Below, in pieces: positions 27,181-62,021 of a DNA stretch of 64,000 nt. Every line of letters starts with the position of its first letter. Within the stretch, counting starts at the first letter, position 1. This DNA comes from Obrimoposthia wandeli (taxonomy: Eukaryota). The notes beneath the pieces are model-generated. The model had not been told where the DNA came from. It ran no database searches and saw only the letters and a program-made list of their open reading frames with translations. Location of the stretch: contig CDROCS010006010.1 in assembly GCA_977020255.1 (NCBI GenBank), positions 1 through 64,000 of the forward strand. Reading direction: 5' to 3'. A program made the translations under genes and the position numbers.

Positions 27181-27283
27181 CTTGTACGCAGTTTTTTTCG
27201 GTTTATCCATAAAGCAGCGCCACCACAGATGAGACAAAGGCCAAAGAATATCCCAAGTACACAACCGACAATTGTCCATGTCC
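27181..27283 (-). CDS. Duplicated transmembrane exon of the host receptor
   Basis: ttgtttcag|GG...WTIVGCVLGIFFGLCLICGGAALWINRKKLRTR|GCAAGG (GC donor); 103 nt, phase 1 to 2. Confidence 0.8.
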
Positions 27284-27344: not shown

Positions 27345-27415
27345 AGGTTCCGGTTTGGAATTCATAACTGCCCGCTGTGAAGAATCCGTTTGGTGAGTAT
27401 GCTCTAAAGGCAGTC
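27345..27415 (-). CDS. Duplicated juxtamembrane exon of the host receptor
   Basis: tttag|G...TAFRAYSPNGFFTAGSYEFQTGT|GTAAGT; 71 nt, phase 2 to 1. Confidence 0.8.
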
Positions 27416-38330: not shown

Positions 38331-41184
38331 TTATCTTAGATCCTCATCAGTTGCTCGTTCTTCTTCACACTGATCATCAGCTGGAGATTCAGATTCTTCT
38401 CCTAGATCCTCATCAGTTGCTCGTTCCTCTTCACACTGATTGTCAGCTGGAGACCCTGCTTGTTCTTCTAGATCCTCATCAGTTGATCGTTCTTCTTCAC
38501 ACTGATCATCAGCTGGAGATCCGTCTTGTTCTTCTAGATCCTCATCAGTTGCTCGTTCTTCTTCAAACTGATCGTCAGCTGGAGACCCGGCTTGTTCTCT
38601 TAGATCCTCATCAGCTGCTTGTTCTTCTTCACACTGATAAGCAGCTGGAGATTCAGATTCTTCTCCTAGATCCCCATCAGTTGCTCGTTCCTCTTCACAC
38701 TGATTGTCAGCTGGAGATCCGTCTTGTTCTTCTAGATCCTCATCAGTTGCTCGTTCTTCTTCAAACTGATCGTCAGCTGGAGACCCGGTTTGTTCTCTTA
38801 GATCCTCATCAGTTGCTCGTTCTTCTTCACACTGATCATCAGCTGGAGATTCAGATTCTTCTCCTAGATCCTCATCAGTTGCTCGTTCCTCTTCACACTG
38901 ATTGTCAGCTGGAGATCCGTCTTGTTCTTCTAGATCCTCATCAGTTGCTCGTTCTTCTTCAAACTGATCGTCAGCTGGAGACCCGGCTTGTTCTCTTAGA
39001 TCCTCATCAGCTGCTTGTTCTTCTTCACACTGATAAGCAGCTGTATATTCAGATTCTTCTCCTAGATCCACATCAGTTTCTTGTTCTTCAGCAAACTGAT
39101 CGTCAGCTAGAGACCCTGCTTGTTCTTCTAGATCCTCATCAGTTGCTCGTTCTTCTTCACACTGATCGTCAGCTGGAGACCCGGCTTGTTCTCTTAGATC
39201 CTCATCAGTTGCTCGTTCTTCTTCACACTGATCATCAGCTGGAGATTCAGATTCTTCTCCTAGATCCTCATCAGTTGCTCGTTCCTCTTCACACTGATTG
39301 TCAGCTGGAGATCCGTCTTGTTCTCTTAGATCCTCATCAGCTGCTTGTTCTTCTTCACACTGATAAGCAGCTGTATATTCAGATTCTTCTCCTAGATCCA
39401 CATCAGTTTCTTGTTCTTCAGCAAACTGATCGTCAGCTAGAGACCCTGCTTGTTCTTCTAGATCCTCATCAGTTGCTCGTTCTTCTTCACACTGATCATC
39501 AGCTGGAGATTCAGATTCTTCTCCTAGATCCACAGCAGTTTCTTGTTCTTCAGCAAACTGATCGTCAGCTAGAGACCCTGCTTGTTCTTCTAGATCCTCA
39601 TCAGTTGCTCGTTCTTCTTCACACTGATCATCAGCTGGAGATTCAGATTCTTCTCCTAGATCCACATCAGTTTCTTGTTCTTCAGCAAACTGATCGTCAG
39701 CTAGAGACCCTGCTTGTTCTCCTAGATCCTCATCAGCTGCTTGTTCTTCTTCACACTGATCAGCAGCTGCATATTCAGATTCTTCTCCTAGATCCACAGC
39801 AGTTTCTTGTTCTTCAGCAAACTGATCGTCAGCTAGAGACCCTGCTTGTTCTTCTAGATCCTCATCAGTTGCTCGTTCTTCTTCACACTGATCGTCAGCT
39901 GGAGACCCGGCTTGTTCTCTTAGATCCTCATCAGCTGCTTGTTCTTCTTTACACTGATAAGCAGCTGTATATTCAGATTCTTCTCCTAGATCCACATCAG
40001 TTTCTTGTTCTTCAGCAAACTGATCGTCAGCTAGAGACCCTGCTTGTTCTTCTAGATCCTCATCAGTTGCTCGTTCTTCTTCACACTGATCATCAGCTGG
40101 AGATTCAGATTCTTCTCCTAGATCCACAGCAGTTTCTTGTTCTTCAGCAAACTGATCGTCAGCTAGAGACCCTGCTTGTTCTCCTAGATCCTCATCAGTT
40201 GCTCGTTCTTCTTCAAACTGATCGTCAGCTGGAGACAAAGCTTGTTCTGTTAGAACTTTGTCAGTTGCTCGTTCTTCTTCACACTGATCGTCAGCTAGAG
40301 ACGAAGCTTGTTCTGCTAGATCTTCGTCAGTTGCTTGTTCTTCCTCAAACTGATCGTCAGATGGAGACCCATCTTGTTTTCCTAGATCTTCATCAGTTGC
40401 TCGTTCTTTTTCATACTGATCATAAGCTGGAAACACTATAACAGCTGGAACTGACGGATAGAAATTTTCTTTTTTGGCATCTTTATTGTTAATAAACATG
40501 AGCATCTGCATCGCACCTTCTTCATCCTTGGATTCATCTTCCGTATACAACGGTACTTCCTCTTCATATTCCTTTTTATCGTCCCAGTCCCTGATAACAG
40601 ATATCTTATTGTTAACTCTGTCTACTACCACACGAACCTCCACTTCTTCGTTTTTATCGTCACAGTCACTATCAAAATTTTTATCATTTTTCAGACTAAA
40701 CTCCACTCCCATTTCGATTGAACCAGCTCTACTTTTCAATTCTACTGAATTCAAATATTCTGCATCTACACAGTCATTCTCAGGGCCGGTCAGTTCACCA
40801 TCAAAACTAGTTTGCGTGACCAATATATTTCCCTCTGCATATCCAACATACCCAGCAACCGTAGATCTATCTACATTGTCAACAAAATCTTGTCCGCTGC
40901 CTTCAGATGGCATACTCCACTCAACTCCGTTGTCTACATCCTCATAGACTCCTGAAGGTCGCGCATTTGATTCTTGGTGGACCTCAAGCTTGTTCCTGTA
41001 TTTCTGATTGTCGTATTTGTCCTTAAAATCGCCCACCGCAAGCCCTGGCATGCCGTAATAACTTACACTTAGCCCACTTTCATAAGCTGATGGATTAGGA
41101 TGAAGTTCTTTTAGTATTGGTGTATCATGATCATTGGCTTCAACATTGTCGTCAATGGTTGCTTCATTACTGAGATGGAATGAT
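38331..41184 (-). CDS. Terminal exon: 950-aa acidic cytoplasmic tail with Tyr motifs and about 32 x 22-aa repeats
   Basis: Acceptor at 41185-41186; AYES, YYGM, VYEDV and EYEEE motifs; 66-bp repeat 38335-40430; AATAAA at 38288-38293 (minus strand). Confidence 0.8.
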
Positions 41185-44100
41185 CTAAAAATGAAAACTT
41201 CCGTTATACATTCAGTCACTTACACATACACAGTCAATCTCAGTCATAACCACAGTCACATTCATTTTCGAAATCACATTAACGGTCCCAGGCTCGGTCA
41301 GTCATAGTTACATAGCCACAGTAACATCCATAGTCACAGTGACATACATTTCTGTAATCAGTCACAGTCACACAGTCATACTGTCACAGTTACACAGTCA
41401 TAATGTCACAGGCACACAGTCATACTGTCACAGTCACACAGTCATACTGTCACAAACACAGTCATACTGTCACAAACACAGTCACACAGTCATACTGTCA
41501 CAATCACACAGTCATAATATCACAGTCACACAGTCATAATGTCACAGGCACACAGTCATAATGTCACAATCACACAATCATAATTTCACAGGCACACATC
41601 AAAATATCACAGACACACAGTCATAATGTCACAGTCACACAGTCATAATGTCACAGACACACAGTCATACTGTCTCAGTCACACAGTCATAATTTCACAG
41701 GCACACAGTCAAAATGTCACAGACACACAGTCATAATGTCACAGGCACACAGTCATACTGTCACAGGCACACATTCATAATGCCACAGTCACACAGTCAT
41801 AATGTCACAGTCACACAGTCAAAATGTCACAGACACACAGTCATACTGTCACAGTCACACAGTCATAATGTCACAGACACACAGTCATACTGTCACAGTC
41901 ACACAGTCATACTGTCACAGTCACACAGTCATAATGTCACAGGCACACAGTCATACTGTCACAGGCACACAGTCATAATGCCACAGTCACACAGTCATAA
42001 TGTCACAGTCACACAGTCAAAATGTCACAGACACACAGTCATACTGTCACAGTCACACAGTCATAATGTCACAGTCACACAGTCATAATGTCACAGGCAC
42101 ACAGTCATACTGTCACAGTCACACAGTCATACTGTCACAGTCACACAGTCATACTGTCACAGTCACACAATCATACTGTCACAGTCACACAGTCATAATG
42201 TCACAGTCACACAGTCATAATGTCACAGACACACAGTCATACTGTCACAGTCACACAGTCATAATGTCACAGTCACACAGTCATAATGTCACAGACACAC
42301 AGTCATACTGTCTCAGTCACACAGTCATAATTTCACAGGCACACAGTCAAAATGTCACAGACACACAGTCATAATGTCACAGGCACACAGTCATACTGTC
42401 ACAGGCACACATTCATAATGCCACAGTCACACAGTCATAATGTCACAGTCACACAGTCAAAATGTCACAGACACACAGTCATACTGTCACAGTCACACAG
42501 TCAAAATGTCACAGACACACAGTCATACTGTCACAGTCACACAGTCATAATGTCACAGACATACAGTCATACTGTCACAGTCACACAGTCATACTGTCTC
42601 AGTCACACAGTCATAATTTCACAGGCACACAGTCAAAATGTCACAGACACACAGTCATAATGTCACAGGCACACAGTCATACTGTCACAGGCACACATTC
42701 ATAATGCCACAGTCACACAGTCATAATGTCACAGTCACACAGTCAAAATGTCACAGACACACAGTCATACTGTCACAGTCACACAGTCATAATGTCACAG
42801 ACACACAGTCATACTGTCACAGTCACACAGTCATACTGTCACAGTCACACAGTCATACTGTCACAGGCACACAGTCATACTGTCACAGGCACACAGTCAT
42901 AATGCCACAGTCACACAGTCATAATGTCACAGTCACACAGTCAAAATGTCACAGACACACAGTCATACTGTCACAGTCACACAGTCAAAATGTCACAGAC
43001 TCACAGTCGTGACTGTCACAGTCACACAGTCATAATGTCACAGGCACACAGTCAAAATGTCACAGACACACAGTCATACTGTCACAGGCACACAGTCATA
43101 CTGTCACAGTCACACAGTCAAAATGTCACAGACACACAGTCATAATGTCACAGTCACACAGTCAAAATGTCACAGACACACAGTCAAAATGTCACAGACA
43201 CACAGTCATAATGTCACAGTCACACAGTCATAATGTCACAGTCACACAGTCAAAATGTCACAGACACACAGTCATAATGTCACAGTCACACAGTCAAAAT
43301 GTCACAGACACACAGTCAAAATGTCACAGACACACAGTCATAATGTCACAGGCACACAGTCATACTGTCACAGGCACACAGTCATAATGTCACAGGCACA
43401 CAGTCAAATAGGCCTTGCCTTGTACGCAGTTTTTTTCGGTTTATCCATAAAGCTACGCCACCGCCGATGAGACAAAGGCCAAAGAATATCCCAAGTACAC
43501 AACCGACAATTGTCCATGTCCCTGAAACAATTCGTATTTGATGTGAATAAACATTGGAAATAGCATTGAATCATCCACTTACAGGTTCCGGTTTGGAATT
43601 CATAACTGCCCGCTGTGAAGAATCCGTTTGGTGAGTATGCTCTAAAGGCAGTCCTAAATTGGAGTTACAATAATTAATCGTTGCACATTAGAAATTAGAA
43701 CTTATTCTGCACATTTTATTCTCCACTATCTAATGAAGTCATCTAAGAAACAAGGATATATTTTAATTTCCACATGATAATGAATGAGTAATTTCACATT
43801 CAGAAATAATGTTGATTGAAACATCTGAAATAAAGAAATTGACAGAAAGCAGTCATCCGCATTTGTGCTCTACATTAAAAGAGGTCGTATGCGTTATGCC
43901 CCCTTCAATTTGACAATGGCATCGGTTGATGTTCCCACATTAAATGTAAAGATAAACCATTCAAATACCGATTGCAGAGTCAGGGGGCCGGGTTGGCGTT
44001 GTGTGGGGCAACATTTTGATCAGACTATCCATCATTGGAGATATGGACGCTTTCATAATCCCGTCTCACTTGCCAAACAATCTCGGTGTCACATTGGCAA

Positions 44101-47100
44101 AACACTGCACAACACGACGTTTGTTGTTTAATAGGACAATATTGAGCGGAGTTTTGCATTGCTTCGAATATGCCAAGCGAAGTTACCAATGAAGTTACTT
44201 AAAAATACAATAAGTACAGAAGCATAAAGATGTTGATGGAAAATTTGAATTTTTATAATGAAAACAATTTATTGACTTTTTAATTTTTATTTTATAAGAA
44301 ATTTCCGAACATTCTTTGTATAAAAACGAACTAAAGTTATCTAGTAATGATCCAATCTTTCCGTTTATCACTATGTATAAATGTCATTTGCTGATAAAAA
44401 CATTTCCCATGTTTATTACCTAAATCACCAATTTTCTGGATAAAAATCTTAATGAGAATGAAAAATACAGTTTTAATGACATTCAACATCCAAGAATATC
44501 TTTACAAATTGCTTTAATAATTTCAACTCTATGCTTAGAAGAGGTAAAAATTTATTTATTTTTCATTTGACCAACTTTATCAAAATGTGAGATGATTATG
44601 ACAAGCATGCAAAGCCTAGGATTTATCTTTATCTCCAGTTGAACATGGGAAATAATTACAATTCGTTGATTATAAATTGCCATTTTGTGACCAAAATATA
44701 CAATTTTTAAGTATCAATGAAGCAAAAAATATTAAGACACTTTTATAATTGAATATAAGTATTTTATTAAAAATATTAGAAGTTATATTATTTTAAAATT
44801 ATGAGATTTATGAAAATTGACAAAAACGTATATAATATCATTTAACTTAAATTTAATAGGAGGTAGAAAATTTTCGAGAATATATTGAAATCAGCGCAAA
44901 AAATAGATTATTTTTTCATTACTAATAAATTTTGGATGAGTTTTAGATCGATGAATTTTTAAAATATATCTTCAATAACCAATAGTATTTGGAACATAGT
45001 CGTATCTGGAAAGGTGAATGATTAGAAGTACTGGCGAATAATGATTTTTCTTGAATGAAAGAACTTCAAAGGGACCTTTAAAATGCGATTGATTGTTTGC
45101 TCCATTTCTTCCACATCGATTTTGATACATCAAGCTAACTTTGTCGCCAATCTTATTTTCAAAATTGGTTGTCTCAAGGTCGACAATCTCATCTCAAATG
45201 TTAATCATGGAATGGACCCAATCATTATATGATACGTCTTCATTAGGGTTACCTGGGCATTTTGAAGTGCAAAATTTGTGTACGAATTGAAATTAAAATA
45301 GGGTGTAAAACATCTGGCAAAAGATTCTACTACCCTCTTTCCCATTATTCGATTGTTCCTCTCTGTCAGTATGTTAGCCTGCTCCTGAAACACTGATGCT
45401 ACTGGCTGTTGACTCTTTCAGAAATGCTGCTCACAAATTCTCCTCCATGATCATTGATCTGAACATCTACAGCACATGAATGTCTACATACAATATATTC
45501 GAATATAAATTCCATAACCAAATCCGCAGTCTCACCCCTAATGCTCTAGGCCCAGGTTGTTTAGTAAAATAGTCCACAGCAAGAACACAGCATTTATAGC
45601 CATCATCAGTTCAGGTCCATTTTTTGTTGATTCCAATCTGGTGCTTTGGACGGTTCAAACTTCTGCGGGCGTCATTCCGATGTAGAGGGATTTAAATGTA
45701 TTTGCTGGCAAATATCGCAAATATCTCGTACATCAACTTTCAGACCCCTTCAAATATGTTAATGTGCAACTAAATCCTAGGTTTATCGCCTCGATGGTCT
45801 GCCATAACCATCCTCGTGGTACAGCCTAACATTTTCTTTTTACGCATAAGTTGATACTACGATCCTCAATCATCTTTACATTATTTTAAATTTGTTTAAT
45901 TTCAGACCCCTTATTTAACATTTGTGCTCATAATTATTAAAAATATCATTTAGATACTTAGAAATATTTCAATTCAATTTAGAGGCCAAGAAGACTTTTG
46001 GTACTTAAAATCTGTGATAATTTAGAATAAAAGACTTAAATTAAACTAATGTGCTTCAACAGAAAATTTAACAGCTGCATAAACTTTCCAAGAGCATTAT
46101 TTTTAACCCTCGTTGATTATACGATTGAGAACAATCAACTCACAGTACTTTTAACCCTTCTCGCTTGTTTGAAGATGTGTATCTTTGGAAGATAAAGAGT
46201 GAGATCGAATATTGCTAAACCATCGTGCAGCTGGAATTTTGCCATAACCAAATATATATAGCTTGTTTAACTTATATTTTATTAAAAATGTATTTGTAGA
46301 ATGAATGTGAATTGGGATGTTTTATAAATGTCTGGATGGATCAGTATTTGGGATATTTTTTACCATACAAGGATTGGTGTTTTGTATTTTTCTGATGTAC
46401 TGATTTGTGTTGAAAATGCAATTGTTTCATTTTGATTGTGAATGTGTCACTGAATGTGAATTTAAGCGGGAAAATATGACTTGTTTACCTTGCAATAAAG
46501 TGGCGATGAACAGCAAATTAACGAAGACACTTGGAACAAAATCTCACAAGAGATAAAGACATTTGCCTATTATTTTAGAGATAGCCCATGCATTATGTGC
46601 CTGGCTATCCTGGACCTTCCTCAATGGCAAAAATCGAGTCTCACCTGTATTTTGTGTTTGATTTCAAAGGTCCATTGCAGTAGTAGCCCTTGTATTCACA
46701 ACCGTCTTCCTTGCCCAGGGTGAATAATTGGTCCTGGAATCCGCGGTTTGAGGTGGCATTTGTCATGGCCTTTGCCACAGCATTTGCCTTATTTAGTATG
46801 GACAATTTGTGGTTGACGCGAATTTCGTATATACAATCTGATGTAGCGCCTTTGCAGCTGGAGTAATCCTGGGATGTTTATAAGGTGGTCATTGGGGTAG
46901 GTGATGAAAATGTTTATACACTACAATTAGACAAAACACAAAGCCAATTAAAAATGACAATAATGTACAAAAAACCCAAAGTTAATTGATTTCAAAATAA
47001 TCAATTTTAAAAAGTTGAGTCTGAAACATTTGTTGATACAAAATGGAAATCAAGCAATTATATCCAGTCTAGAAGACTTTAAAATGTGATACGAAGAAGG

Positions 47101-50100
47101 AAGTCTGTTGAAAATCTTGAAAAAGAGTATTATTAAAAAAAACGTTTTAAACAATCAAAGAAAGATATTAGAAAGAATCCAAATGGATTGGTTTGGTCCA
47201 AAACAATATAAAGGATAATAAGGTGTTATACATCGAATTATTAAATTCGAACTAAAAACAAATTGTAAGTAAAATTTTCGAGTAATAATATTGTCTAAAA
47301 ACGTTGTACCTTAATTTCAGACTCCATCGAACTCAAATAAAACTAGTATTCTTAAATTATACCCCTACTTGTTTTGAGATAAATTATTGGAAATTCTGTT
47401 TAATATTGTTAAAGGAAACGTTAATCTCGATAGAAACAAGGCCACAATTAGAAAACATTAGTTTATATTAGTAATACAAACAGAGTTGCTGGTAAATGTA
47501 AAATTGTATTGAAACAAAAAGTTGGCTTAATTGGTGCACATTTACTAATGTTTGCGACAGTGATTCTTGCTAGCACATTTGCCTTACAAACAATAATGGG
47601 AATAACTTTCATAATGTAGAATTTAAAATCAATTGTTGTAATGGAAAGGAGATAGTACGATCCCAAAATTTACGTCATATTAAAGCTAAAAATAAACCTA
47701 AATAAATTTTAGAAATTGTAATTTATTTTGATATATTACAACTTGTAAAAGATGACGCTCACCCCATTGAAGAGAGTGTTGTTTGAAAGTCTGTCGAAGT
47801 TGAGTGTCAGGTTCCCTCCACCCACTGACACGACTACGGTGAAGTTCTTGACCAAATCGAACTGATCATCAAAGAGACTCAGCTTAAGATTCACAAACAG
47901 CGATTTCTTAAGGTCCAAGCTTCCATTGTTAAGTATTGTTTTACTGACATTTAGCTTCTCGGATAGATCTTCCACTGTTTTGTTTTGTGGTGCCAACGGT
48001 ATGGGGAATGTCGTCTCTGGGAGCGGATAAGATGCTCATAAGACCACTGCCTTGCAAAGATTTTAATGTATTCTCACCTTTAGGTACCACAATTAAAGTG
48101 TTAAATCCCTCGTTTGTGTATGCTCGCAGTCCAATTCTGAAGTAGAACAATCATAAAAAATAATGAAATTAATTTTAAATATTTTAAATATATTTTTTCT
48201 GAAGTTTTGTAAAGGTAATTCAAATATGATCTTATTCATTACAAAGCGCAACATGAAAATATCCTTTTTCTAACCGTCGATATCTGACAATCCTGACGAG
48301 AGGGAATTTTTTATAACATTTTGTAATAAGATAACACATTCAGACTGGAAGTTAGCGATTTCGGTACAGGGAAAAATAAAACTTACTGTTTGTTACGCTG
48401 TGTTATTTATAAATCTAAATAATTTTTTTCGATTTTCTTTCCTTGAATATCAAGCTCTGTTTATTTTGTTTTTCAAGTTATTTAATAATTTTTGAGATAA
48501 CTTTTATAGAGAGACTTTTTGACACTTGAATATCTCCAAAATTTACATAAACATAAGAATTGTTGTAAGCATTATTTCTAATCTCAGAATTTTTCTACAT
48601 TATATTTTCAACATATGTACAGTTATTTTTATAATAAAATTCTATGAGAGTCATAAAAAGTAAATGTTTATATATATTACACGGAGTGTCCATTGCTTCT
48701 GAACATTTAAGCCATTATATCCCAGAGTCCTCGTATGGCACCTGGGAAAATTTGTTGCATTATTTAAAAAAACACTTTTTAGTTGAATCTAATAATTGCA
48801 CTACACAATATACAAACCTTCATAATTTCGACACAATTTTGTATGAATGGAATTATTTGGTAATATTCGAAAAAAACAAGGTAAAATATCGACATTATTT
48901 ATTTTAAATAAAAACTGGGGATAATATGGGTTTATGATTATATTAAACAGTATTTCTAATCTAAAAATATCTAGTTATAGTGTTTTATGAGGTTTTTTTA
49001 AGTTTATTGATTATTGAAATTAAAATATTTTAGTTTTAATTGTACTATTAAGATGTCTCTTTCAATTTATAAAATCGGTTATATTAATAACAGTACATTG
49101 ACAAAATTTTGAGTCAATGTGATTCATGAAGATTTAGAAATGTTTGAAGAATCGGATAAGGATATGTATGAAGAAGTGAAACAATATTTCAAATACAAAG
49201 TCAGATTCTTGAAGAAGGCTCAACTAATTACTTAAGAAAATCCTGTTACAATTAAAAGAAGAAAGTTCAGTTATTATCTATCAAATATTCAAAAACCAGA
49301 TTTTCAATATCTTAAACAGAAAGTTGAAAAGGCAGTTCCAAATTTTATATTCAATAAGATACGAATTTTATATCTGAGGAGCTGATGCAGAATTTTTAAA
49401 AGAATATGGAAGAGAAATAGATGTTGATACCTTTCTGAAAAAGATGCAATGGACTGTAACAATTCGACTTCTTCTAATATTTTTCTTTTGTTTAAATATG
49501 TTTTGATATAAACATTTTTTTAATCAGTTTCTTTATTTTTTAGAATGGATCCTTTCTGAGTTATTTACGAAATTTTTATTATTCAGAAAGATTTTCAAAA
49601 AGAAAACCGTGTATTATATTAAAAAGATATAAAATTATATAAGTTATGAATTCTGTGTAATATCAAAAGTCGAAAATAAATATTTTAATGAAAATTTATC
49701 AACAAATGGTATTGATCAATTCAAATATATTTTGGAATGTTAAGTACCTGACGAAGTACCTGAAGAATTTTTTTTTCAAATTGAAGGTGATCATAGTCTG
49801 GCATAAAATATGTAGTTATTTATTCATACAAAATGATCATCTAAAATGATCATCTAAAATCTTGTCTACAAGTGAATACTGATGAGGTCAATAGAGCTAT
49901 ATTTGATTCTTGTGGTCTTCTATAATCACTTTAATCTCTTTTTGATTCCTTAGGTTCATCATTGGAGTTCGAATGTGAAATTCATACACATATGCACAAA
50001 ATTTCAATCCATACACACATACTGGACTTATCCACATACTTACAGGTGTTACAAATTTAAATATACGTCTAAATTCTAGAAAATATAATATTCAATGAGA

Positions 50101-53100: not shown

Positions 53101-56100
53101 TTCATCAGAATAATAATAAAAACTTGAGTCCTGATTTTAAAAATCTTATTTTTTTATAATCGAAATTAGAATTTAGCTAAAACTTAAATATTTAAATTAT
53201 AAAAAAATTCTTTCAATTAAAAAATAATTTTGGATTTTGTAAGTTATAAAAACATATAAAAATATTTTTTCCAGACTTGATATTTTACTGATAAACTATC
53301 TATTTCATTCATATTTAGAAGCACAATTATGCCCCAAATCCCTTCATCGAGATCCCAAATTTAGCACTGACGAATGGTATTTCATGGAGATATGTCTGTG
53401 ATTGTTTTATGTCAGTTATGCAAGACGCAACTTGGCAGGGATTAGAAGCAGTTGCGTACATTGTGCAAAAGCAACCACTCCCCTGGCTACCCTTTCACTC
53501 TTTATCGACAGCAAATTCCAACTAGATAAATATCAGGAGAAGCACTTGTCAATAGAGCTCACAGCTCCTGGTGTGAAAACTTCTCCTCATACACAATCGA
53601 TCGAGAATTGCATAGCAAAGGCCTTACTCCTCGTCGATAACTTATGTTTGTGGACCGTGAATTACTTTCGTTTTGCCATTGGGCACTGTTTTAGTGTCCA
53701 TCCGCACTGCTCTGAGAGATGAATCCGTCAATGACATTTTGACTAGAAGATACAATGGGCCAAGAAAATATGCAGACTTTTCTCCAATGAAGCCGTCGGA
53801 AATTACGATAAAATGGAAACTTTCATTGATTCAGCATTCTCAAATTATCGACATTGTATAATAACCGCAGATCTCGAGAAATGATACGGATCAGTGTCAT
53901 GTGAAGCAGATTGGGATGTTATTAAATTGTGTAACTTTACACAACGTTTAATTGGAATATTTTATTATTATTTATTGTATGTGGCCCGAGTAAATTAAGT
54001 TTGATGAATCTTATTCAAAATCATTGGCTTATCTGTCACTATCTTAATTGACTTGTTTGTTCAGATGTTTGATGCTGTGCTGAAGCAGTATTGTGGCCAG
54101 GAAAGACTCACGGTAGGCCTTTGTCTTCAGTGTTCTGCTGGCCACCTCTCCATACCCCCAGCCATTGCGGGCCTGCACTTCCAGCACGTAGTTGGTGCTC
54201 TTTTTGATCCACAATGAGTTGCTCGCCACTGACAAACTCGACGCCGTGTTGTTCAGATAGGAATCGGTTGAATTCAATTTCGCAATATCGTCACATCCTC
54301 TTTTCCTCGCCAGATTCCCCTTCTGGTAGACTTTCTGGGCAATACACACAGACACTTAGATTCAGCAGTACAAATATTTCCACAAATAAATACAAATAAC
54401 AATCAAATTATAACCTAACAAATTAAATTTGTGTAGCAGAAGGTCTTTCGAGGTTCATCTGCAGTGTACTCAAGATAATCAGACTATCGAGGCTCATCTG
54501 CAGCGTACTCAAGATAATCAGACTATCGAGGCTCATCTGCAGTGTACTCAAGATAATCAGACTATTGAGGCTCATCTGCAGCGTACTCAAGATAATCCGA
54601 CTTCCGAGGCTCATCTGCAGCGTACTCAAGATAATCAGACTTCCGAGGCTCATCTGCAGCGTACTCAAGATAATCAGACTATCGAGGCTCATCTGCAGCG
54701 TACTCAAGATAATCAGACTATCGAGGCTCATCTGCAGCGTACTCAAGATAATCAGACTTCCGAGGCTCATCTGCAGCGTACTCAAGATAATCAGACTATC
54801 GAGGCTCATCTGCAGCGTACTCAAGATAATCAGACTTCCGAGGCTCATCTGCAGCGTACTCAAGATAATCAGACTATCGAGGCTCTTCTGCAGCGTACTC
54901 AAGATAATCAGACTATCGAGGCTCATCTGCAGCGTACTCAAGATAATCAGACTTCCGAGGCTCATCTCAGTGTACTCAAGATAATTCAACTTTCGATGGG
55001 CAAAGTCAAGATAAATCCCATTTGGTTTCCTGGACCGATTTTTGACCGACTCCAGTTTTAAAACGTCCTTATTAAGGCAACCAGAGCCTCGTGATTCTGT
55101 GAGTATATCGTAGTTCTCCTCTAAGTTCACCATTATCAATAAAATATTTTTCTGGCCACCGACCAGCTGAATTTGCATTCCCATGCCAACGAACACCATC
55201 TCGAAACATTCTAGTTTCACTGCTAATGTCAAACTGTTCCTCGTCACTTCACTTTTGTCTGAAATGAAACCCTCTCCTCTCCATCATCCACAATTTCATC
55301 ATCTAGCAATGTTTAAAAGGTATCTAGATAATTTGTACTGGGTTTATAGATAGCAACTGTCAATACGATCTGCAATCTATTGGTAAGTTATACAGAGTGT
55401 ATTAGATTCTACAACAACATCAGTAGCGATTGCCTCTTTATATCCATGCAATTTTCGAATGCCTGGCACGAAACAGTTCAAATCATGATTCAGTTGTACA
55501 AAAACAGAACAGAATATTTGAGACAAAATGTCAAAATGAAATTAGATGTTTACTTACACATTGATTGAAAATGGCTGCCACACATAGAAATACATTTATA
55601 TCTATACTTATGCGTGTATAAAGTTTAATAGCCAATTTGAATTTGTATTTGAAAATGCAATCAAATAAAGTGTATGTATATGTCAATATAGACATGAAAT
55701 TAATACAATCTGAGTATGTAAGGCCACATAGGAAATCATATAATTTTATATGCTTAAGTATGGTAAAATGTATTGAGGTACATCAGCACCCGTAAAAGCA
55801 TTTACCAATGTATACTTGAAATAAAAATATACAATAAAGTTAGACAAAAACAAATTCAATTTCTATAATCACAATGAAGTCACGCGATTTCAAACGTTTT
55901 TTGATTCTTCATATCAGAGGAAGTACACAAAGCGAAGAACCGTTAAAAGTAACCATGTTTAGAAACAATGATATTCGAGCACTCACCGTATCGTTACAGT
56001 CCGCACAAACCAGGGTCCACTCCACTACGCACCTGGCGTCCTCCCTGAGAGTCACCCGGTACTCCGATACAGGACCATTTTCTGGCACGGGACTGCTCCA

Positions 56101-59100
56101 CAACACGAGCACCATCGATTCGTTCTGGGAGGTGCCAACATCCAGGTTGACGGAAATGGTCGCAGCTGTAATGAAATCTCAGCTGTCTCAGATTTTGGTG
56201 GCGGTTAATGAAATACATTGCATGAACTATTGATTCGATGATGATTTACAGAAGGGGACGCCCGTGGCTGCAATGAAATCTCAGCTGTCTCAGAGCTTGT
56301 TGGCGGTTAATGAATTGCATTGCATGAACTATTGATTTGATGATGATTTACAGAATTTTTGTATTCCACACTTTTAAATACCTTTATTTGGATTATAGTA
56401 CAAAACCAGTTGAAAAACCGCATTGAACATGAGGGGGTTTAATGGGCAAAAAATAACTAATATACTTTCAAAAATTGATAACAAAATAAAAATTTATTTT
56501 ATCAAATCCTTCGAAATATTCATCAAAATCAACATCAAATGTTTCACTTATTTTCTAAATCTAATTTGAGTATATTTTCAACCTGGTTCACTTTCCCATT
56601 CGCTTTCCATCGCACTTGTCAACATCTTTCCATTTTCTGCGTCACCTGTATTAATCATTTTACCAAAGCCATTTAGTAGGCATGCACTTTGTACATGAGC
56701 CCGATCTCTTATTAATACGGTTATTCACAACGTTATTTCCCAAGGGAAACACGAGCGCATGTATTCTACTTAGAAAGACAATAAGCCAAACTGTATATTT
56801 AATTAATTAATTGTAATTTATTTAAATTAGATTTTATTGGGAGCACTTTGATTATCTTTTTCCGTCTCTAGAGTTTAGCAGAAAGAGAAAGATACTTTTA
56901 TTTAAATTACACGTCGTTGCACACTATTGGCAGAAACTGTGATAATAATCGAGCATTGATAATTGTCTAAATTTATTGCGTAGATTTCGGAAAATGATAT
57001 CGTGCATTGAAAAATTGGAATACTATTTTGTTGATTGGACCAACCCCTGCGCTGTAGTGTCACCCTAACGCAGCACCTATGTTAATTGAGCACTTTTGAG
57101 TCTTCGCATGTGGGGTTTCAAATATCAACCGCATTTATCAAGGCAATTCTTAACCAAACTTTATTTTTATCGATCACACTTTTCAAATTACAATTCAAAT
57201 TTCCTTCACCACCTTGTTCGATACTTTTCATTAATTCAATAAAACTTCCATAACAACTTTAACATTTCTAAATCACCAAGGTCATAAAAAACATTTTTTT
57301 AACTTTTTTAAACAAACATCCCTCTTTTTTCTTTCTCACCTTCACCACCATTTTTACTGTCCTACCCAAAATCATCATCATACAATTATTACTATTATTC
57401 AATCTTACTATTTATTAGATAATCACATGCTTACTATTATTATTCAGCATGTGATTATCTACATCTTCCTACATTCTGCATTTTCCGCCTCCAACACAAG
57501 TATGTTCCAAAACAAGCACCATACCTTACTTAGAGTGAAAATATAATAATTCTTAAATTCTTAAATAATTCTTAAATTGCTAAAAGTCGACCCAACACAA
57601 TATCGAACTAGGACCATTGAGAGTTCGAATCAAAGTACTGATCTATAGGTTAACCAAGAATTAACCAACGAGACGGTAGTCTAATCCCTGATTCGAGGAT
57701 TTCTAATTCCTGATATATCAGAGAAGTAACGTCAGCGTCGATTGGCTCCGGCTTAGTTTTAGCTGATTTTCGGTCTTGTGAAATACAGACCCTTTTTTAA
57801 TTTAAAATCTCAATTGACCTAACCGGCTTAATACATTAGCCCTACACAACACATCAGTAGTTTTAAGGACCATACAGTTATCTTATACACAGCCTCTACA
57901 ACACAACGCAAACAACACAATTAGAAACCTTCAAATAGTGAGATAAACCTTCGGAGAATTGAGAATAGGTTGCCACATCCATCTGTAAGATCTATTGCTA
58001 CAGAACTCACATACGAAAATTATAATAATCAGACATTTATCAGAACACCATCACTAATAGCAAAATATATTCCTGCCATTTTTCATTTATGCGACTTAAT
58101 GATAAAATTTATTTCAACATAGAGAAAAACCTTTCTGCAGACACTTGACTCGCTGGTGCCGCTAGTACTATAGTAGGTAGAAGGATGGAGTCTAGACCAC
58201 CTGCCCCCCTGTGTGCGTATACAATGTTAAAGGGTGTCACACCATAAGGGTCTGGCTCAGAAAGGTTATGATAGGGGGGACAGGTCAAGTGATCTAGTCT
58301 CCATTCTTCTTATGGTCAACCAACATACCCAAAGGTTGTGATCATCCATAATTCAAAGGGTCAGGCAGAGTTTTGACTTGAAGGTTTGAAGGTATAATTG
58401 AGGTCAACAATGGTTGGCCATCACATCTAAAGGGTCATGGTCGTCCATAAACCAAAGGGTCGTGTTAAAGACAAAATCAAGTTTAAAATATCAAGGTTTT
58501 AGTACATGGTTGGAATCATCTTTAGAAGGCGAATTCATCTAAAAAAGTATGGTCGTCCATAGATGAAGGGTTAAAAAAAAGTTGGAATTCATATTTTTAA
58601 GTAAATGGTTGTATTTGTCAACATATTACAAATTTAATCATGTAAAAATTTTATGGTCGTTCGCAAGGTAAAGGTCAGATTTGGCATAAGTTAAGGAATC
58701 ATATAGTAATCAATCAATTATTCTATGTGAAAGTTAAAGTTCACTCTTATCAGTTAAGGAATGTATTACGTAACAACATACACATTATACTATGTGAAAA
58801 TTGAGATTAAAGTTTTCTTAGGCTTACACATCTAAAGAATTATAATAAAATTTATGTTAATAACTTAAAGTATATTTTAAAATCAAAATAAAATAAGAAA
58901 GAAGTCAGAGAATAATACAAAATTAAACACATTTATTATGTAATTTCATAATGTCCATAAGCGCGGTTCTATTTTTCTCGATCCAATAGCGTTTGTCATC
59001 TGATGAGCTGAGAGCAGTCTTTAGTATCATGATTGTGTATAGCTGGTGATTTATTGCTCCAAACCTATTTTGTGGTATAGTATATGCATTACCGTTTTCA

Positions 59101-62021
59101 TACACGTCTAAATATGTTTGATGTACAACCGTTGATCCCTTTAGATTTACTCCCTTTGCTTTATTATTTTCAACGTCATCTTCAAACTTAAGTGAATAAC
59201 ATTTACAAAGTAAGAAAATCTATTCTTTATACATTCTTCATTCCGATTCATCTTTAAATAATCCTATTTTACTATTAAATTCATCAGAATATAATGGATC
59301 ATTCACATTATAATTTGACGTATCTAATGCTCCATCTGCAATCATTTGAGGCAACAACTGATTTCTTAAATTAACACCTTTGCATTCTAAAAAGAATGAA
59401 TCAGTATATCCGGCAACTTTATAAATTGAACAATTAAATAGTGATCTATAATTTTGTAAATCATGATACTGAAGAGTATACATTCGTAATGTTTTGGATT
59501 CTATTGATGGAAAGAAAATTAATTTAGTGAAACGAATGTTTCCAAATTTGAGAATTGTGAATTATAATAAAAGTTTCAAAAATTTATAGAAAATTCCAAA
59601 AAATATTCGATGTCCGTTGAGAAAAAAGGAACACATTGTGCTTATTTGAAAGGTTTTTCTCTATGTATTAATTATATAAATTGTATATAAATATATTCAT
59701 TAATGATATTTTAGTTTGATTTTTTATATATAATTTAAATTATTTAAAGAAATTTTACCATAATTCTTTAGATGCATAAGACTGGGAAAAAAATGTGATC
59801 TAAATTTTCACATATAATAGTGTGTGTATTATTACGTAATACATTATTTAACTCATAAGTGTACTTTAACTTTTACATAGAATAATTGATTGATTACTGT
59901 ATGATTCCTTAACTTATGCCAAATCTGACCTTTACCTTGTGAACGACCATAACATTTTTGCATAATTAAACTCGTAATATGTTGACAAATGTACTTAAAA
60001 CTATGAAATTCCAACTTTTTTTAACCCTTCATCTATGGACGACCATATCTTTATGGATGAATTCGCCTTCTAAAGATGATTCCAACCATGTAATAAAACC
60101 TTGATATTTTAAACTTGATTTTGTCTTTAGCTCCACTCTTTGATTTATGAACGACCATACCTTTATTGATGAATTCGCCTTCTAAAGATGATTCCAACCA
60201 TGTACTAAACCTTGATATTTTAAACTTGATTTTGTCTTTAGCCCGACCCTTTGATTTATGGACGACCATGACCCTTTAGATGTGATGGCCAACCATAGTT
60301 GACCTCAATTATACCTTCAAGTCAAAACTGAACCCGACCCTTTGAATTATGGATGATCACAATCCTTGGATATGTTGGTTGACCATAAGAAGGATGGAGA
60401 CTAGATCACTTGACACCTCCCCCTATCATAACCTTTCTGAGCCAGACCCTTATGTTGTGGCAAGACCCTCTTATGGTGATGCAACATATACCCTTGTGGT
60501 GTGACACCCTTTAACATTGTATGCGCACACAGGGTGAAGGCTAGTCATCTAGACTCCATCCTTCTACCTACTTAATATGTTTGCAAGTTTACTCATTATT
60601 GCATTTGCTTGTTCTCAGTATATAAAATTGTTTGTATTTTATGGCATTATTTTTATATCACTGAAAGCACTAATTAAGTCAGTTACTGTGACCAAAGTTT
60701 CCTTTCTCGTGTTTTTATTTAAAATATCATCTTTCACATTGTCTTCTTCTACTATTACTTCAATATCCTGATCCTTTCGTTTATCGTTTAAAAAGTTATA
60801 AGATTTAAAATATGCTTTTAGCAAATTCTTTCCCGTCAGATTTAGTAGGTTTAGGTAGCGTGGGTCCATAAAAGCCGCGGCCATAGCAGATGCACAATGC
60901 TGATTTTCTCTTTTTTCCATAATTTTGCACTATAGAAGACATTTTTAAAATATATTTTGCATTTAATGTACTTTTCATATTGGTCTTTGATCCTCGTTAC
61001 AAATTCACTTGTTTCGGCTTTACTGCCTATGTTTTCGATATCTTTACGTGACCATTTTGGGACGAATTTAGCAATCAATTTCAGGACAGTCTGACAAGAA
61101 TTATTCTATCTCCAAACTGTACTTTAGGCCCACACACTAAAAATACCGCTTTTTGACCAGTTTGTTTTCTGAATACCTCATCATCGATAGCACAAGAGGT
61201 CAAGGTAAATATGTTTAGTCAAGACCAGAAATATATCTGCAGGCTCGAAAGATTGATTGGTCGACATTCGCATTACCATTGTTGAAACAAAAGCTGCATT
61301 CCCTCAGAAAAGACTCAGAGATATTTGAAACATTGGACGAGGGATGTTGACAATTTTGCTGGATTGTTTGAGCCTCCTGCATACGCTTTCCTGGAGCTCT
61401 TCTATAAACATGATCTCTCATCTCACTCCATAAGAAGAAATCGCAAACAAACATGTTGGAAGAGCCTGATGAGCATACTAAAGGTCCATATAATTTTGTA
61501 ATATATACAGGTATATGTAAGCAAATAAGCATTGTGCAGCGTGAAGTGATTGGGAAGCAGTGTATCGCTCACCGTACTGATTGGTCCTGTTTTGAAACAC
61601 CAATTCGTCACCGTATCCCCAGCCATTCTGAGCTTGGATATGGATGTTGTAGACGGTGTAGGGCTTGATCCCGGTGTAGTTGCTGGTCATAGACAGTGGC
61701 TGGATTGTGGTGCGGGAGGAGGGGAACACAGTGAGGCAGCTGCGGTGGGCTGCGCTGCCGCCATTGCCGTCAATCTGCAGGCACGGAAGAGCACAGATAA
61801 AGCGGCTGAGGTCACTGGCAGAGAGTCAGAGCTTACCTTGTTAGGGCAGTCGGAACACGTCACTCTCCAGACAGCGATGCAAGTGGAGTCGTCTTGACTC
61901 TTGAGCACCACATTGTACTTCCACACCGACCCATTGGAGACAATCGGCGCGCTCCACTGCACCTCCAAATTGGCATTCGGGAATTCGCTGCGCATATGTT
62001 CACTTGTCGGTCTTCCACTCC
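38331..62021 (-). CDS. Host type I membrane protein (5'-partial, about 1,610 aa visible): Cys-insert FN3 domains, two RPTP-type juxtamembrane domains, TM helix, acidic repeat tail, no PTP domain
   Basis: Exons 62021-61837, 61774-61573, 56165-55987, 54334-54112, 50672-50398, 50350-50139, 48136-48078, 48016-47763, 46868-46645, 43653-43583, 43521-43419, 41184-38331. All 11 junctions are phase-compatible and stop-free (10 GT-AG, 1 GC-AG). Confidence 0.85.
41360..43410. repeat. 22-bp intronic satellite, expanded to about 2 kb (about 90 units)
   Basis: Same unit as 26760-27170, with higher-order variants. Confidence 0.95.
43419..43521 (-). CDS. Transmembrane exon of the host receptor
   Basis: WTIVGCVLGIFFGLCLIGGGVALWINRKKLRTR; hydrophobic stretch followed by a basic stop-transfer cluster. 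Confidence 0.88.
43583..43653 (-). CDS. Juxtamembrane exon
   Basis: (R)TAFRAYSPNGF completes the YYCNGPLKSNTKYR domain from 46645-46868. Confidence 0.85.
45040..45860 (-). pseudogene. Ty3/Gypsy-type integrase remnant in a host intron
   Basis: Zn-finger-like DVRDICDICQQ, DGYKCCVLAVDYFTK, IVCRHSC...INDHGGEF, ERNNR. The duplication endpoint 45545 lies inside it. Confidence 0.75.
46645..46868 (-). CDS. Host exon, second juxtamembrane domain (missed by the ORF track)
   Basis: cccag|DYSSCKGATSDCIYEIRV...LFTLGKEDGCEYKGYYCNGPLKSNTKYR|gtgag. Confidence 0.9.
47763..48136 (-). CDS. Two host exons (48136-48078, 48016-47763) separated by a 61-nt intron
   Basis: IGLRAYTNEGF...|ETTFPIPLAP...LKLSLFDDQFDLVKNFTVVVSVGG...; consensus splice sites. 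Confidence 0.85.
49030..50050 (+). mobile_element. Maverick fragment in a host intron: disrupted X1 gene, X2-like gene and subterminal motif
   Basis: EDLEMFEESDKDMYEEVKQYFKYKVRFLKKAQL (X1), VENKYF..IDQFKYIL..DHSLA (X2), and a GTGAAATTCATACAC...CCATACACACAT motif like those at about 9760 and 23870. Confidence 0.8.
50139..50672 (-). CDS. Two host exons (50672-50398, 50350-50139) separated by a 47-nt intron; first juxtamembrane domain
   Basis: ...LPLTKFRDQPNITFFTMVVSIGG...YFDK|TWAFC...FLIGRGTDDCGRDARYCNGAMKEGSAYR|gtaag. Confidence 0.85.
54112..54334 (-). CDS. Host exon, C-terminal half of an FN3 domain
   Basis: IKKSTNYVLEVQARNGWGYG (FN3 L.P.T.Y.V.V.A.N..G.G type). Confidence 0.88.
54445..54990. 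repeat. 39-bp intronic minisatellite, about 14 units
   Basis: GAGGCTCATCTGCAGCGTACTCAAGATAATCAGACT(AT/TC)C. Confidence 0.95.
55987..56165 (-). CDS. Host exon, N-terminal half of an FN3 domain
   Basis: LVLWSSPVPENGPVSEYRVTL...CVVEWTLVCADC|gtgagt. Confidence 0.9.
58923..59483 (-). pseudogene. pPolB C-terminal remnant inside the mini-Maverick
   Basis: GYTDSFF, LLPQMIADGALDTSNY, IGLFKDE, KAKGV, SSDDKRYW. Confidence 0.85.
59485..59690 (+). pseudogene. C-terminal remnant of the DEDD-like/Cys-His accessory gene
   Basis: VLDSIDGKK..VKRMFPNLR...KIPKNIRCPLR..HCAYLK aligns with VLDEINGKK..KNYFPKLR...KIPGNICCPYR..HCAYKK. Confidence 0.7.
61215..61532 (-). pseudogene. Tc1/mariner-superfamily transposase C-terminal remnant
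   Basis: CDFFLWSEMRDHVY...FLRECSFCFNNGN resembles (SPDLxP)xDFFLWGxLKxxVY...RxxxCxxxxG. Confidence 0.6.
61573..62021 (-). CDS. Two host exons (62021-61837, 61774-61573) forming one FN3 domain, 62-nt intron
   Basis: LEVQWSAPIVSNGSVWKYNV...TCSDCPNK|IDGN...GIKPYTVYNIHIQAQNGWGYG. Confidence 0.9.

What the first reader, a model, noticed from the sequence alone, without database searches (positions are those of the whole stretch)
38331..62021. Receptor with an RPTP-like ectodomain but a giant acidic repeat tail in place of a phosphatase
FN3 repeats followed by the 'CNGPLK...Y...RAY' juxtamembrane domain are typical of R3-type receptor tyrosine phosphatases. Here that domain is doubled, each FN3 carries a C..(W)..C.DC...C insert, and the intracellular part is a single-exon 950-aa D/E-rich disordered region with Tyr motifs (VYEDV, AYES) and no catalytic domain. 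It may be a decoy or adaptor receptor with length-variable tails.
Basis: partly seen in the sequence, partly recalled or inferred. Interest (0 to 1): 0.7.

Follow-up and report, generated by a model that had tools for sequence, protein, structure and literature searches.

The report
Giant phosphatase-less R3-RPTP-like receptor gene
This is the 3' end of a very large membrane-protein gene built like an R3 receptor tyrosine phosphatase on the outside, but ending inside the cell in a species-specific, very acidic repeat tail instead of an enzyme; that kind of domain loss is already known from uroplakins and a sea-squirt gene, and no RNA evidence could be obtained here.

Summary
On the minus strand, 12 exons (62021-38331) have consensus splice sites and consistent intron phases. 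[quoted passage not shown] That juxtamembrane domain carries four cysteines and the C-x7-CNGPL signature, which the literature reports only in R3 RPTPs and uroplakins UPK2/3. The tail is 37% D/E, with 31 repeats of 22 aa.

The gene is much larger than reported. It continues beyond the window to at least 120.7 kb of its contig, with about 60 FN3 domains. These include 23 near-identical 1.41-kb units.

No PTP or kinase motif lies on the contig. A second TM+tail cassette (17 repeats) comes from a ~16-kb tandem duplication. About 20 paralogous tails at 60-66% identity mostly keep open frames. The non-repeat part of the tail (288 aa) has no relative among 1.84 billion protein representatives.

Phosphatase-less R3 derivatives are already known (UPK2/3, Ciona "Nocat"). 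I therefore class this as a new variant of a known kind: giant, with a doubled juxtamembrane domain and an acidic repeat tail.

The joined protein was not searched, by rule.

The parts
61837..62021 (-). First-half exon of the second-to-last FN3 domain (phase 1 in, phase 0 out), with the C-x3-W-x3-C-x-D-C motif
   Evidence: Open segment. Acceptor ...ttccag and donor gtaagc.
61573..61774 (-). Second-half exon of the second-to-last FN3 domain, with the NGWGYG F-G motif (phase 0 in, phase 1 out)
   Evidence: Pfam fn3 profile positions 48-76, E 0.023. Splice sites.
55987..56165 (-). First-half exon of the last FN3 domain
   Evidence: Pfam fn3 profile positions 5-42, E 2.4e-4. Splice sites.
54112..54322 (-). 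Second-half exon of the last FN3 domain
   Evidence: NGWGYG motif. Splice sites.
50398..50672 (-). Juxtamembrane module A, exon 1 (3 N-glycosylation sequons)
   Evidence: Homologous to module B exon 1, E 2e-5. Splice sites. A 47-nt intron follows.
50139..50350 (-). Module A, exon 2: C1, C2, an RQKR furin-type site, and C3-x7-C4NGAM
   Evidence: BLASTP against module B exon 2, E 3e-8. The phase-2 donor is shown.
48078..48136 (-). Module A, exon 3 (the 'RAY' piece), phase 2 in and phase 1 out
   Evidence: Sequence and splice sites.
47763..48016 (-). Module B, exon 1 (6 N-glycosylation sequons)
46645..46868 (-). Module B, exon 2: C1, C2 and C3-x7-C4NGPLK, the signature of the R3-RPTP / UPK2-3 long FN3-like domain
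   Evidence: Pfam PTP_tm profile positions 69-93, E 0.085. The best Atlas cluster is PTP_tm, score 0.84. The signature is defined in PMC5242461. There are 17 copies at 91-99% identity in the genome.
43583..43653 (-). Module B, exon 3 ('FRAY...')
   Evidence: It is identical in cassette 2.
43419..43521 (-). Transmembrane exon: a hydrophobic helix followed by NRKKLRTR. It ends at a GC donor (AAG|GCAAGG), phase 2.
   Evidence: Sequence. Phase bookkeeping. The donor is conserved in cassette 2.
41361..43406 (.). 22-nt minisatellite that fills the intron between the TM exon and the tail exon (about 88 copies here, about 19 in cassette 2)
   Evidence: TRF. The same repeat occurs on many other contigs.
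40320..41184 (-). Tail exon, non-repetitive part (about 288 aa) with 14 Tyr, including YEDV, AYES, YDN, YRN, YLN and YEEEV
   Evidence: Acceptor tttcatttttag. No Pfam family. No relatives in public protein collections. About 20 paralogs in this genome.
38331..40400 (-). Tail exon, 31 tandem 22-aa (66-nt) acidic repeats, followed by a TAA TAA stop
   Evidence: TRF. Repeat-unit table.
27345..27415 (-). Second cassette: copy of module B exon 3
   Evidence: 0 mismatches and the same splice sites.
27181..27283 (-). Second cassette: copy of the TM exon
   Evidence: 4 mismatches; GC donor kept.
24638..26570 (-). Second cassette: tail exon with 17 repeats (655-aa open frame)

Best explanation
The finding is the 3' end of a real, recently amplified gene family. 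The family encodes giant type-I membrane glycoproteins derived from the R3 receptor tyrosine phosphatase lineage, with the phosphatase exons replaced by one lineage-specific terminal exon.

Shown:
- The exon structure, the FN3 domains, and the doubled R3/uroplakin-type juxtamembrane domain.
- One TM helix with basic residues on its C-terminal side.
- No N-glycosylation sequon in the tail against 17 in the ectodomain part.
- No PTP or kinase motif on the contig.
- Variable repeat number in the tail.

Inferred mechanism:
- About 60 FN3 domains form a long, glycosylated rod on the cell surface, acting as a coat, spacer or adhesion molecule, much as PTPRQ is thought to.
- The membrane-proximal domain A may be cut by a furin-type protease at RQKR, as in UPK2a and many invertebrate R3 RPTPs.
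- The cytoplasmic tail does not catalyse anything. It offers tyrosines in acidic contexts (YEDV, YxN) as possible docking sites for SH2 proteins.
- The tail also carries a polyanionic, probably disordered repeat segment. Its length changes through unequal exchange within a 66-nt coding minisatellite.
For: - Gene model: canonical sites, exact phase closure and no stops.
- FN3 identity: both halves match the Pfam fn3 profile in the right order. The best PDB sequence match is the Eph-receptor FN3, including its Cys-containing stretch. All top fold matches of the model are FN3 domains.
- Juxtamembrane domain: C1-C4, C3-x7-C4NGPL and a furin site, with intron phases 1:0:2:1:2 here against 1:1:2:1:2 published (PMC5242461). 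PTP_tm matches occur in four independent exons.
- The module is doubled.
- Module exons lie 13-20 kb upstream, on the same strand, of PTP-domain exons on two other contigs (C5570, C2375). So real RPTP genes here probably use the same module.
- No PF00102 match on C6010 or on any of the roughly 19 family contigs, among the 150 candidates scored. No PTP or kinase motifs on the gene's strand.
- The tail exon always lies on the same strand, 3.3-7.7 kb downstream of module B exon 2 in 14 paralogous loci, plus one at 17 kb.
- 17 of 20 paralog tails at 60-66% amino-acid identity have no stop inside the match.
- A distant paralog on C483 has the same plan, with a doubled module, a TM and a short non-catalytic tail.
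Against: - There is no RNA evidence at all.
- The two in-window tails give dN/dS 0.74 from only 24 differences.
- Variation among repeat units is not concentrated at third codon positions, and the repeat is also open on the opposite strand. The repeat part therefore shows no sign of amino-acid-level selection.
- The same acidic repeat occurs at other loci that lack the tail's unique part, for example C3232.
- The paralogs align to the intron just upstream about as well as to the exon, at 72-77% nucleotide identity.
- One FN3 unit near C6010:108.7 kb has a frameshift.
- Pfam matches are all below the gathering scores, because each domain is split across exons and the joined product was not searched.
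Confidence: 0.6

Rival explanations
1. The receptor normally ends just after the membrane, with a uroplakin-like short tail. Without splicing, the TM exon runs into a stop 9 codons after the proposed donor. On this reading the acidic exon is an optional or rarely used terminal exon, or mostly 3' UTR, and its repeat part is a minisatellite that merely happens to be open.
For: - The TM exon's reading frame stops at 43385 if the intron is not removed.
- The only phase-compatible strong donor is GC, not GT.
- The repeat is open on both strands and shows no third-position bias.
- dN/dS is 0.74 between the two cassettes.
- The tail has no relatives outside this genome.
- The acidic repeat also stands alone at other loci.
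Against: - The acceptor is excellent (a pyrimidine run followed by ag), and it is conserved in cassette 2.
- The intron phase (2) and position (just after the TM) match intron 5 of R3 RPTP and UPK3 genes.
- The unique 200-290 aa of the tail keeps an open frame in 17 of 20 paralogs despite 34-40% amino-acid divergence.
Confidence: 0.2
2. The locus is a decaying or partly mis-assembled copy. On this reading, haplotype copies were joined in tandem, long near-identical arrays collapsed or expanded, and at least one exon is broken, so the 'gene' as read does not make the protein described.
For: - A frameshift in one of the 1.41-kb units near C6010:108.7 kb.
- Unit lengths vary by 1-2 nt.
- The two cassettes differ by about 1.6% in their flanks, which is also a plausible divergence between haplotypes.
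- 3 of 20 paralog tails carry stops.
- The contig starts 24.6 kb downstream of the second tail.
Against: - All 12 window exons and nearly all of the roughly 118 FN3 half-exons are intact.
- The family has many intact members on separate contigs.
- A single 1-nt error in a 99.9%-identical array is what long-read assemblies typically produce.
Confidence: 0.12
3. It is a true R3 RPTP after all. The phosphatase exons would lie beyond the contig start, more than 24.6 kb downstream of the second tail, and the acidic exon would be an alternative terminal exon.
For: - The window begins at base 1 of contig C6010, so nothing further downstream can be seen.
- Module exons do lie upstream of PTP exons on two other contigs.
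Against: - No PF00102 match on any of the roughly 19 family contigs among the 150 candidates scored.
- The 38 kb downstream of the tail holds only Maverick genes and the duplicated cassette.
- The distant paralog on C483 ends in a stop followed by a Maverick, with no PTP exons in 50 kb.
Confidence: 0.05

Closest known systems
Uroplakins UPK3a/UPK3b/UPK2 (vertebrates)
   Same: Single-pass membrane proteins that kept the R3-RPTP long FN3-like juxtamembrane domain (C1-C4, C3-x(n)-C4NGPL, a furin site after C2 in UPK2a, an intron right after the TM in phase 2) and lost the phosphatase (PMC5242461).
   Different: Uroplakins have fewer than 200 extracellular residues, one copy of the domain, and a tail that is short or absent. 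Here there are about 60 FN3 domains, two copies of the domain and a 950-aa acidic tail. Pairing with a tetraspanin is unknown here.
Ciona 'Nocat' R3-related genes (tunicates; PMC5242461)
   Same: R3-type FN3 ectodomain plus the long juxtamembrane domain plus a TM, with no PTP domain. This is the same kind of domain loss in an invertebrate.
   Different: The Ciona genes have five FN3 domains and a short UPK3a-like tail. No giant array, doubling, acidic repeats or multi-copy family is described for them. I could not compare sequences directly.
PTPRQ / PTPRB and invertebrate R3 RPTPs (Ptp10D, Ptp52F, DEP-1)
   Same: An ectodomain made of FN3 domains, some split by a phase-0 internal intron (1:0:1), then the long juxtamembrane FN3-like domain and a single TM (PMC5336234, PMC5242461). 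YxN tyrosines occur in the cytoplasmic part of several R3 members, and the tail here has three.
   Different: Those proteins have 8-19 FN3 domains and a catalytic PTP domain. This gene has no PTP domain. The YxN enrichment here is not significant (P about 0.06).
Eph receptor first FN3 domain
   Same: It is the best PDB sequence match (EphA2, E 0.02) and the best fold match (EphB1 FN3). The Eph 'V-x-C-x-x-C' stretch aligns with the 'V-T-C-S-D-C' insert here.
   Different: The similarity is weak and local. There is no ligand-binding, Cys-rich or kinase part here.
Giant tandem-repeat surface proteins such as MUC16 or nematode myotactin LET-805 (from my own knowledge, not tested here)
   Same: Very long arrays of near-identical extracellular domains, one TM, a non-catalytic tail, and repeat numbers that vary.
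   Different: These have different domain types (SEA in MUC16). No homology is claimed.

Membership tests
R3 receptor protein tyrosine phosphatases | Extracellular part made only of FN3 domains | tested here: met
   About 60 FN3-like domains, from motif counts. The two halves match Pfam fn3 in order. The top fold matches are all FN3. Caveat: mucin-like exons further upstream may belong to the gene.
R3 receptor protein tyrosine phosphatases | Long FN3-like juxtamembrane domain with the C3-x(n)-C4NGPL signature | tested here: met
   Module B has C-x7-CNGPLK and module A has C-x7-CNGAM. The definition comes from PMC5242461.
R3 receptor protein tyrosine phosphatases | A single cytoplasmic PTP catalytic domain | tested here: not met
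   No Pfam domain in the tail. No PF00102 match on C6010 among the 150 candidates scored. No HCx5R/WPD motif on the gene's strand of the 221-kb contig. Sequence beyond the contig start cannot be seen.
UPK2/3-type phosphatase-less R3 derivatives (uroplakins, Ciona Nocat) | Four conserved cysteines C1-C4 and a furin Rx(K/R)R site after C2 | tested here: met
   Both modules have 4 Cys in exon 2. Module A has RQKR after C2 and module B has no such site. The distant paralog on C483 has RRKR in both of its modules.
UPK2/3-type phosphatase-less R3 derivatives (uroplakins, Ciona Nocat) | Intron pattern with phases 1,1,2,1,2, the last intron just after the TM | tested here: inconclusive
   The phases here are 1,0,2,1,2. 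Four of five agree, including the phase-2 intron after the TM. Exact intron positions could not be compared because the paper's figures are not held.
UPK2/3-type phosphatase-less R3 derivatives (uroplakins, Ciona Nocat) | Short cytoplasmic tail similar to UPK3a (conserved Tyr and Ser/Thr) | tested here: not met
   The tail is 950 aa (643 aa in cassette 2) and has no detectable relative anywhere. Direct alignment to UPK3a was not possible, because I held no reference sequence.
UPK2/3-type phosphatase-less R3 derivatives (uroplakins, Ciona Nocat) | Heterodimer with a tetraspanin partner | not testable with these tools
   Needs biochemistry.
Pfam PTP_tm (PF18861) | Score at or above the gathering cut-off of 26.3 bits | tested here: inconclusive
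   Scored exon by exon: 13.6 bits for window module B exon 2, and 23.9 and 15.9 bits for the C483 exons. In every case only profile positions 61-93 fall in the exon tested. The joined domain was not searched, by rule.
Pfam fn3 (PF00041) | Score at or above the gathering cut-off of 25 bits | tested here: inconclusive
   21.7 and 15.3 bits for the two halves, and 15.9 bits for a copy read through its in-frame intron. The Cys insert splits the match, but the fold search supports FN3.

The most novel reading that the evidence does not exclude
The family may work as a modular 'one ectodomain, many tails' receptor system. The giant FN3 ectodomains are kept nearly identical between loci (91-99%) by gene conversion and tandem amplification. 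They are combined with at least three strongly diverged classes of cytoplasmic tail exon (60-66% identity, with or without acidic repeats). In this gene there are also two alternative TM+tail cassettes that could be chosen by splicing. That would resemble paired receptor families in function, built here on an R3-RPTP chassis that has lost its enzyme, with tail length tuned by a coding minisatellite.
Probability: 0.12. Interest if true: 0.7.

Novelty: new variant of a known kind. Interest (0 to 1): 0.45.

Why it matters
If expressed as modelled, it shows that the R3-RPTP ectodomain has been reused without its phosphatase outside vertebrates and tunicates, and on a very different scale. The scale here is about 60 FN3 domains, a duplicated membrane-proximal domain, a family of about 20 loci, and an orphan polyanionic tail whose length changes by repeat number. 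That would give a natural system for asking what the conserved CNGPL juxtamembrane domain does independently of catalysis. It would also show how new cytoplasmic tails are recruited. If it is not expressed, it is one more amplified and decaying gene family next to Mavericks.

Tried and rejected
- **Tail relatives.** The word search found none among proteins of 529-1683 aa. The exhaustive phmmer search of 1.84 billion representatives also found none.
- **Tail fold.** The single-sequence AlphaFold model has mean pLDDT 37, with at best a weak beta-rich stretch at residues 109-211. That is too poor for a fold search.
- **Tail Pfam.** Only sub-threshold, low-complexity 'Mucin-like' matches.
- **Module exon against PDB sequences.** Nothing.
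- **Atlas search with module A exon 1.** No usable hit.
- **Fetching the roughly 20 paralog tails** for a proper dN/dS and a deeper alignment.
- **dN/dS between the two in-window tails.** 0.74 from 24 differences, which is uninformative.
- **Exon versus intron conservation by DNA search.** Uninformative, because the intron is a genome-wide 22-nt minisatellite.
- **YxN enrichment in the tail.** 3 observed, shuffle P 0.064, not significant.
- **First alignment of FN3 half-exons.** MAFFT misplaced the second halves. It was replaced by alignment A2.
- **SEA-type autoproteolytic domain** for the 'VVVS-GG' motif of module exon 1. I considered this, but there is no Pfam support, so I dropped it.
- **Literature search for 'PF18861/PTP_tm'.** Only noise.
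- **Joined spliced protein.** It was never built for any search or fold. All searches were exon by exon, by reference.
Full report
**Observation.** The window is G000:C6010:1-64000 of a 1.35-Gb assembly. I refined them into 12 exons:
- FN3 halves: 62021-61837, 61774-61573, 56165-55987, 54322-54112.
- Module A: 50672-50398, 50350-50139, 48136-48078.
- Module B: 48016-47763, 46868-46645, 43653-43583.
- TM exon: 43521-43419.
- Tail exon: 41184-38334, with the stop ending at 38331.

Every exon has an AG acceptor behind a pyrimidine run. Ten donors are GT and one, after the TM exon, is GC (AAG|GCAAGG). Intron phases chain without a break (1 + 4826 nt = 1609 codons), and no exon has a stop in its own frame. 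I computed this exon by exon. The joined product was never built for a search or a fold.

**FN3 domains.** Each FN3 is split by a phase-0 intron and flanked by phase-1 introns. This is the 1:0:1 type described for some R3 RPTP FN3 domains in PMC5336234. The first halves match Pfam fn3 profile positions 5-42 (E 2.4e-4) and the second halves match positions 48-76 (E 0.023), both below the cut-off because the domain is split. One upstream copy has an intron that is in frame and stop-free. Read through by reference, its best PDB sequence match is the EphA2 FN3 (E 0.02), and the Eph 'V-x-C-x-x-C' stretch aligns with the Cys insert here. A shallow-alignment AlphaFold model of that copy (mean pLDDT 50) has the FN3 strand order. 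All its top Foldseek matches are FN3 domains, with EphB1 FN3 first and integrin beta4 FN3 scoring TM 0.75 by target. The FN3 assignment and the Cys insert (three Cys in the first half, one in the second) therefore stand.

**Juxtamembrane module.** Modules A and B are homologous in both large exons (30% identity; E 3e-8 and 2e-5), so the doubling is real and old. Exon 2 of each has four cysteines. Module B ends in C-x7-CNGPLK, and module A in C-x7-CNGAM with RQKR after the second Cys.

Chicote et al. [quoted passage not shown]
- C1-C4, and a C3-x(n)-C4NGPL motif 'found only in UPK2/3 and R3 PTPR proteins'.
- A furin site after C2 in UPK2a and many invertebrate R3 RPTPs.
- Introns in phases 1,1,2,1,2, the last one just after the TM.

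Here the phases are 1,0,2,1,2. Weak but concordant profile evidence:
- Pfam PTP_tm for module B exon 2, E 0.085.
- PTP_tm for two exons of a distant paralog, E 5.4e-5 and 0.016.
- The nearest ESM-Atlas cluster is PTP_tm/Fn3_PTPRU, score 0.84, which is a lead only.

**Topology.** The hydrophobic helix is followed by NRKKLRTR. The roughly 650 ectodomain residues in the window carry 17 N-x-S/T sequons, and the 950-aa tail carries none. This fits a type-I protein with a cytoplasmic tail, which is an inference.

**Tail.** The tail has about 288 non-repetitive residues followed by 31 tandem 22-aa units (66 nt). Overall it is 36.6% D+E with net charge -295. Tyrosines sit in acidic contexts (YEDV, AYES, YEEEV). 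There are three YxN motifs, the phosphorylation motif of several R3 RPTP C-termini (PMC5336234), but the enrichment is not significant (P 0.064). No Pfam family matches. The unique part has no relative in the word search or in 1.84 billion representatives, and its single-sequence model is unconfident.

**No catalytic exon found.** No classical PTP or kinase motif occurs on the gene's strand of the whole 221-kb contig. The whole-genome PF00102 search scored 150 candidates and placed none of them on C6010 or on any family contig. The 38 kb downstream of the tail holds only Maverick genes and a second cassette.

**Second cassette.** A tandem duplication of about 16 kb copies module B exon 3, the TM exon, the tail exon and part of a Maverick to 29.3-15.2 kb. 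The unit starts at 45,545 and its flanks are 98.4% identical. Splice signals, including the GC donor, are kept. Tail 2 has 17 repeats, and its unique part is 97.2% identical at the nucleotide level, with dN/dS 0.74 from 24 differences. An earlier first-reader note (s1-211111) read this as two alternative cassettes. I confirm the duplication. I cannot test alternative use, and I cannot exclude a haplotype mis-join.

**Beyond the window.** The gene continues upstream. There are 59 first-half and 59 second-half FN3 motifs, all on the minus strand, from 54 kb to 120.7 kb. They include 23 tandem units of 1,405-1,410 bp, each with two FN3 domains in four exons, at 98.5-99.9% identity. One unit near 108.7 kb has a frameshift. 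Retroelements sit in introns. At 125.4-128.5 kb, three tandem mucin-like Thr/Ala-rich exons lie on the same strand and may be the N-terminal part, but this is untested. The product would then be roughly 7,000 aa or more. That probably explains why a length-limited search could never find it.

**Family.** Module B exon 2 has 17 further copies at 91-99% identity on 16 contigs. The tail's unique part has about 20 copies at only 60-66% identity. These fall into a class with repeats (open frames 405-663 aa) and a class without (281-296 aa). 17 of the 20 have no stop inside the match. In 14 loci the tail lies 3.3-7.7 kb downstream of module B exon 2 on the same strand. At that level of divergence a neutral sequence should have gathered several stops and frameshifts, so the open frames argue for a coding exon. 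This is inference, and I could not fetch the paralogs to measure it.

Ectodomain and tail histories differ. C137 is 97.4% identical to C6010 over 4 kb around the second-to-last FN3, but its tail is only 64% identical.

More distant families with the same doubled module exist (C483, C1941, C6570, C1250). C483, which I read in full, has module-module-TM and a roughly 100-aa tail, then a stop and a Maverick. On C5570 and C2375 a module exon lies 13-20 kb upstream of a PTP exon on the same strand, so these are candidate true R3 RPTPs.

**Caveats on the repeat part.** The repeat is open on the opposite strand too. Variation among units is highest at second codon positions. The same acidic repeat forms arrays at loci without the tail's unique part, such as C3232. 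It behaves like a coding minisatellite under little constraint beyond frame and charge.

**Interpretation.** The best reading (0.6) is a phosphatase-less, R3-RPTP-derived giant surface glycoprotein family with a lineage-specific acidic tail. The rivals are:
- a short-tail main isoform with an optional acidic exon (0.2);
- decay or mis-assembly (0.12);
- hidden PTP exons beyond the contig start (0.05).

**Novelty.** Loss of the PTP domain from an R3 chassis is known from UPK2/3 and Ciona Nocat. What is new here is the scale, the doubled juxtamembrane domain, the tail and the amplification. I therefore class it as a new variant of a known kind.

**Limits.** There is no RNA evidence. The paralog sequences could not be fetched, and the organism is not identified.

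Noticed in passing
window 31500-36130 and 8000-22440 (minus strand); also L025-L032 (C483) 41-49 kb and 1-10 kb: Maverick/Polinton genes (polB, packaging ATPase, integrase, capsid-like) lie directly downstream of the receptor's last exon. They are part of the duplicated unit. The unrelated paralog on C483 has the same gene-then-Maverick arrangement and a 36.7-kb tandem duplication. Possibly Maverick-linked duplication of receptor 3' ends. I observed this only.
   Followed up: partly
window 58926-59561: A polB-like fragment ('...YTDSFFLECKG...') sits inside the intron between the two window FN3 domains.
   Followed up: no
window 41361-43406 and 26745-27168: A 22-nt minisatellite fills the TM-to-tail intron, with about 88 copies against about 19 in the two cassettes. 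The same repeat forms arrays on many other contigs (C515, C548, C1445, C1956, C2407, C3310 and others).
   Followed up: partly
window 54448-54985: A 39-nt minisatellite (13.8 copies, 94% matches) lies in the intron between the two halves of the last FN3 domain. It is open in several frames.
   Followed up: no
window 20823-21896 and 35160-35612: A 21-nt C-rich tandem array (unit TCACCCACCACCCACCGACTT) lies next to the Maverick genes. Its length differs between the two duplicated copies.
   Followed up: no
C6010:125383-128537 (L010), minus strand: Three tandem copies of about 1.3 kb. Each holds a mucin-like Thr/Ala-rich exon (TTATTAG-type repeats) plus a small N-glycosylated exon. They lie 5 kb upstream of the first FN3 exon and may be the N-terminal part of the same gene.
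   Followed up: partly
C6010:~108,590-108,910 (L008): One of the 23 near-identical 1.41-kb FN3 units has a frameshift in a first-half exon. It may be an assembly error or a real lesion.
   Followed up: no
C6010 plus strand near 146,670 and 204,976; C1425:70327-71502 (L020): The same dual-specificity-phosphatase-like open frame (motif VLVHCQKGISRS; 391 aa open on C1425) occurs at least three times. It looks like part of a repeated element.
   Followed up: no
C3232 (several arrays, e.g. 35.1-37.1 kb and 178.3-179.3 kb), C3513, C4223, C6696, C2298: The acidic 22-aa/66-nt repeat of the tail forms long open arrays (up to 766 aa) at loci that lack the tail's unique part and lack module exons among the listed matches.
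   Followed up: no
C6010:121,000-124,450 and 81,100-84,600 (L005, L009, L010): Retroelement reading frames (reverse transcriptase, RNase H, integrase, gag-like zinc knuckle) lie inside introns of the giant gene, on the same strand.
   Followed up: no
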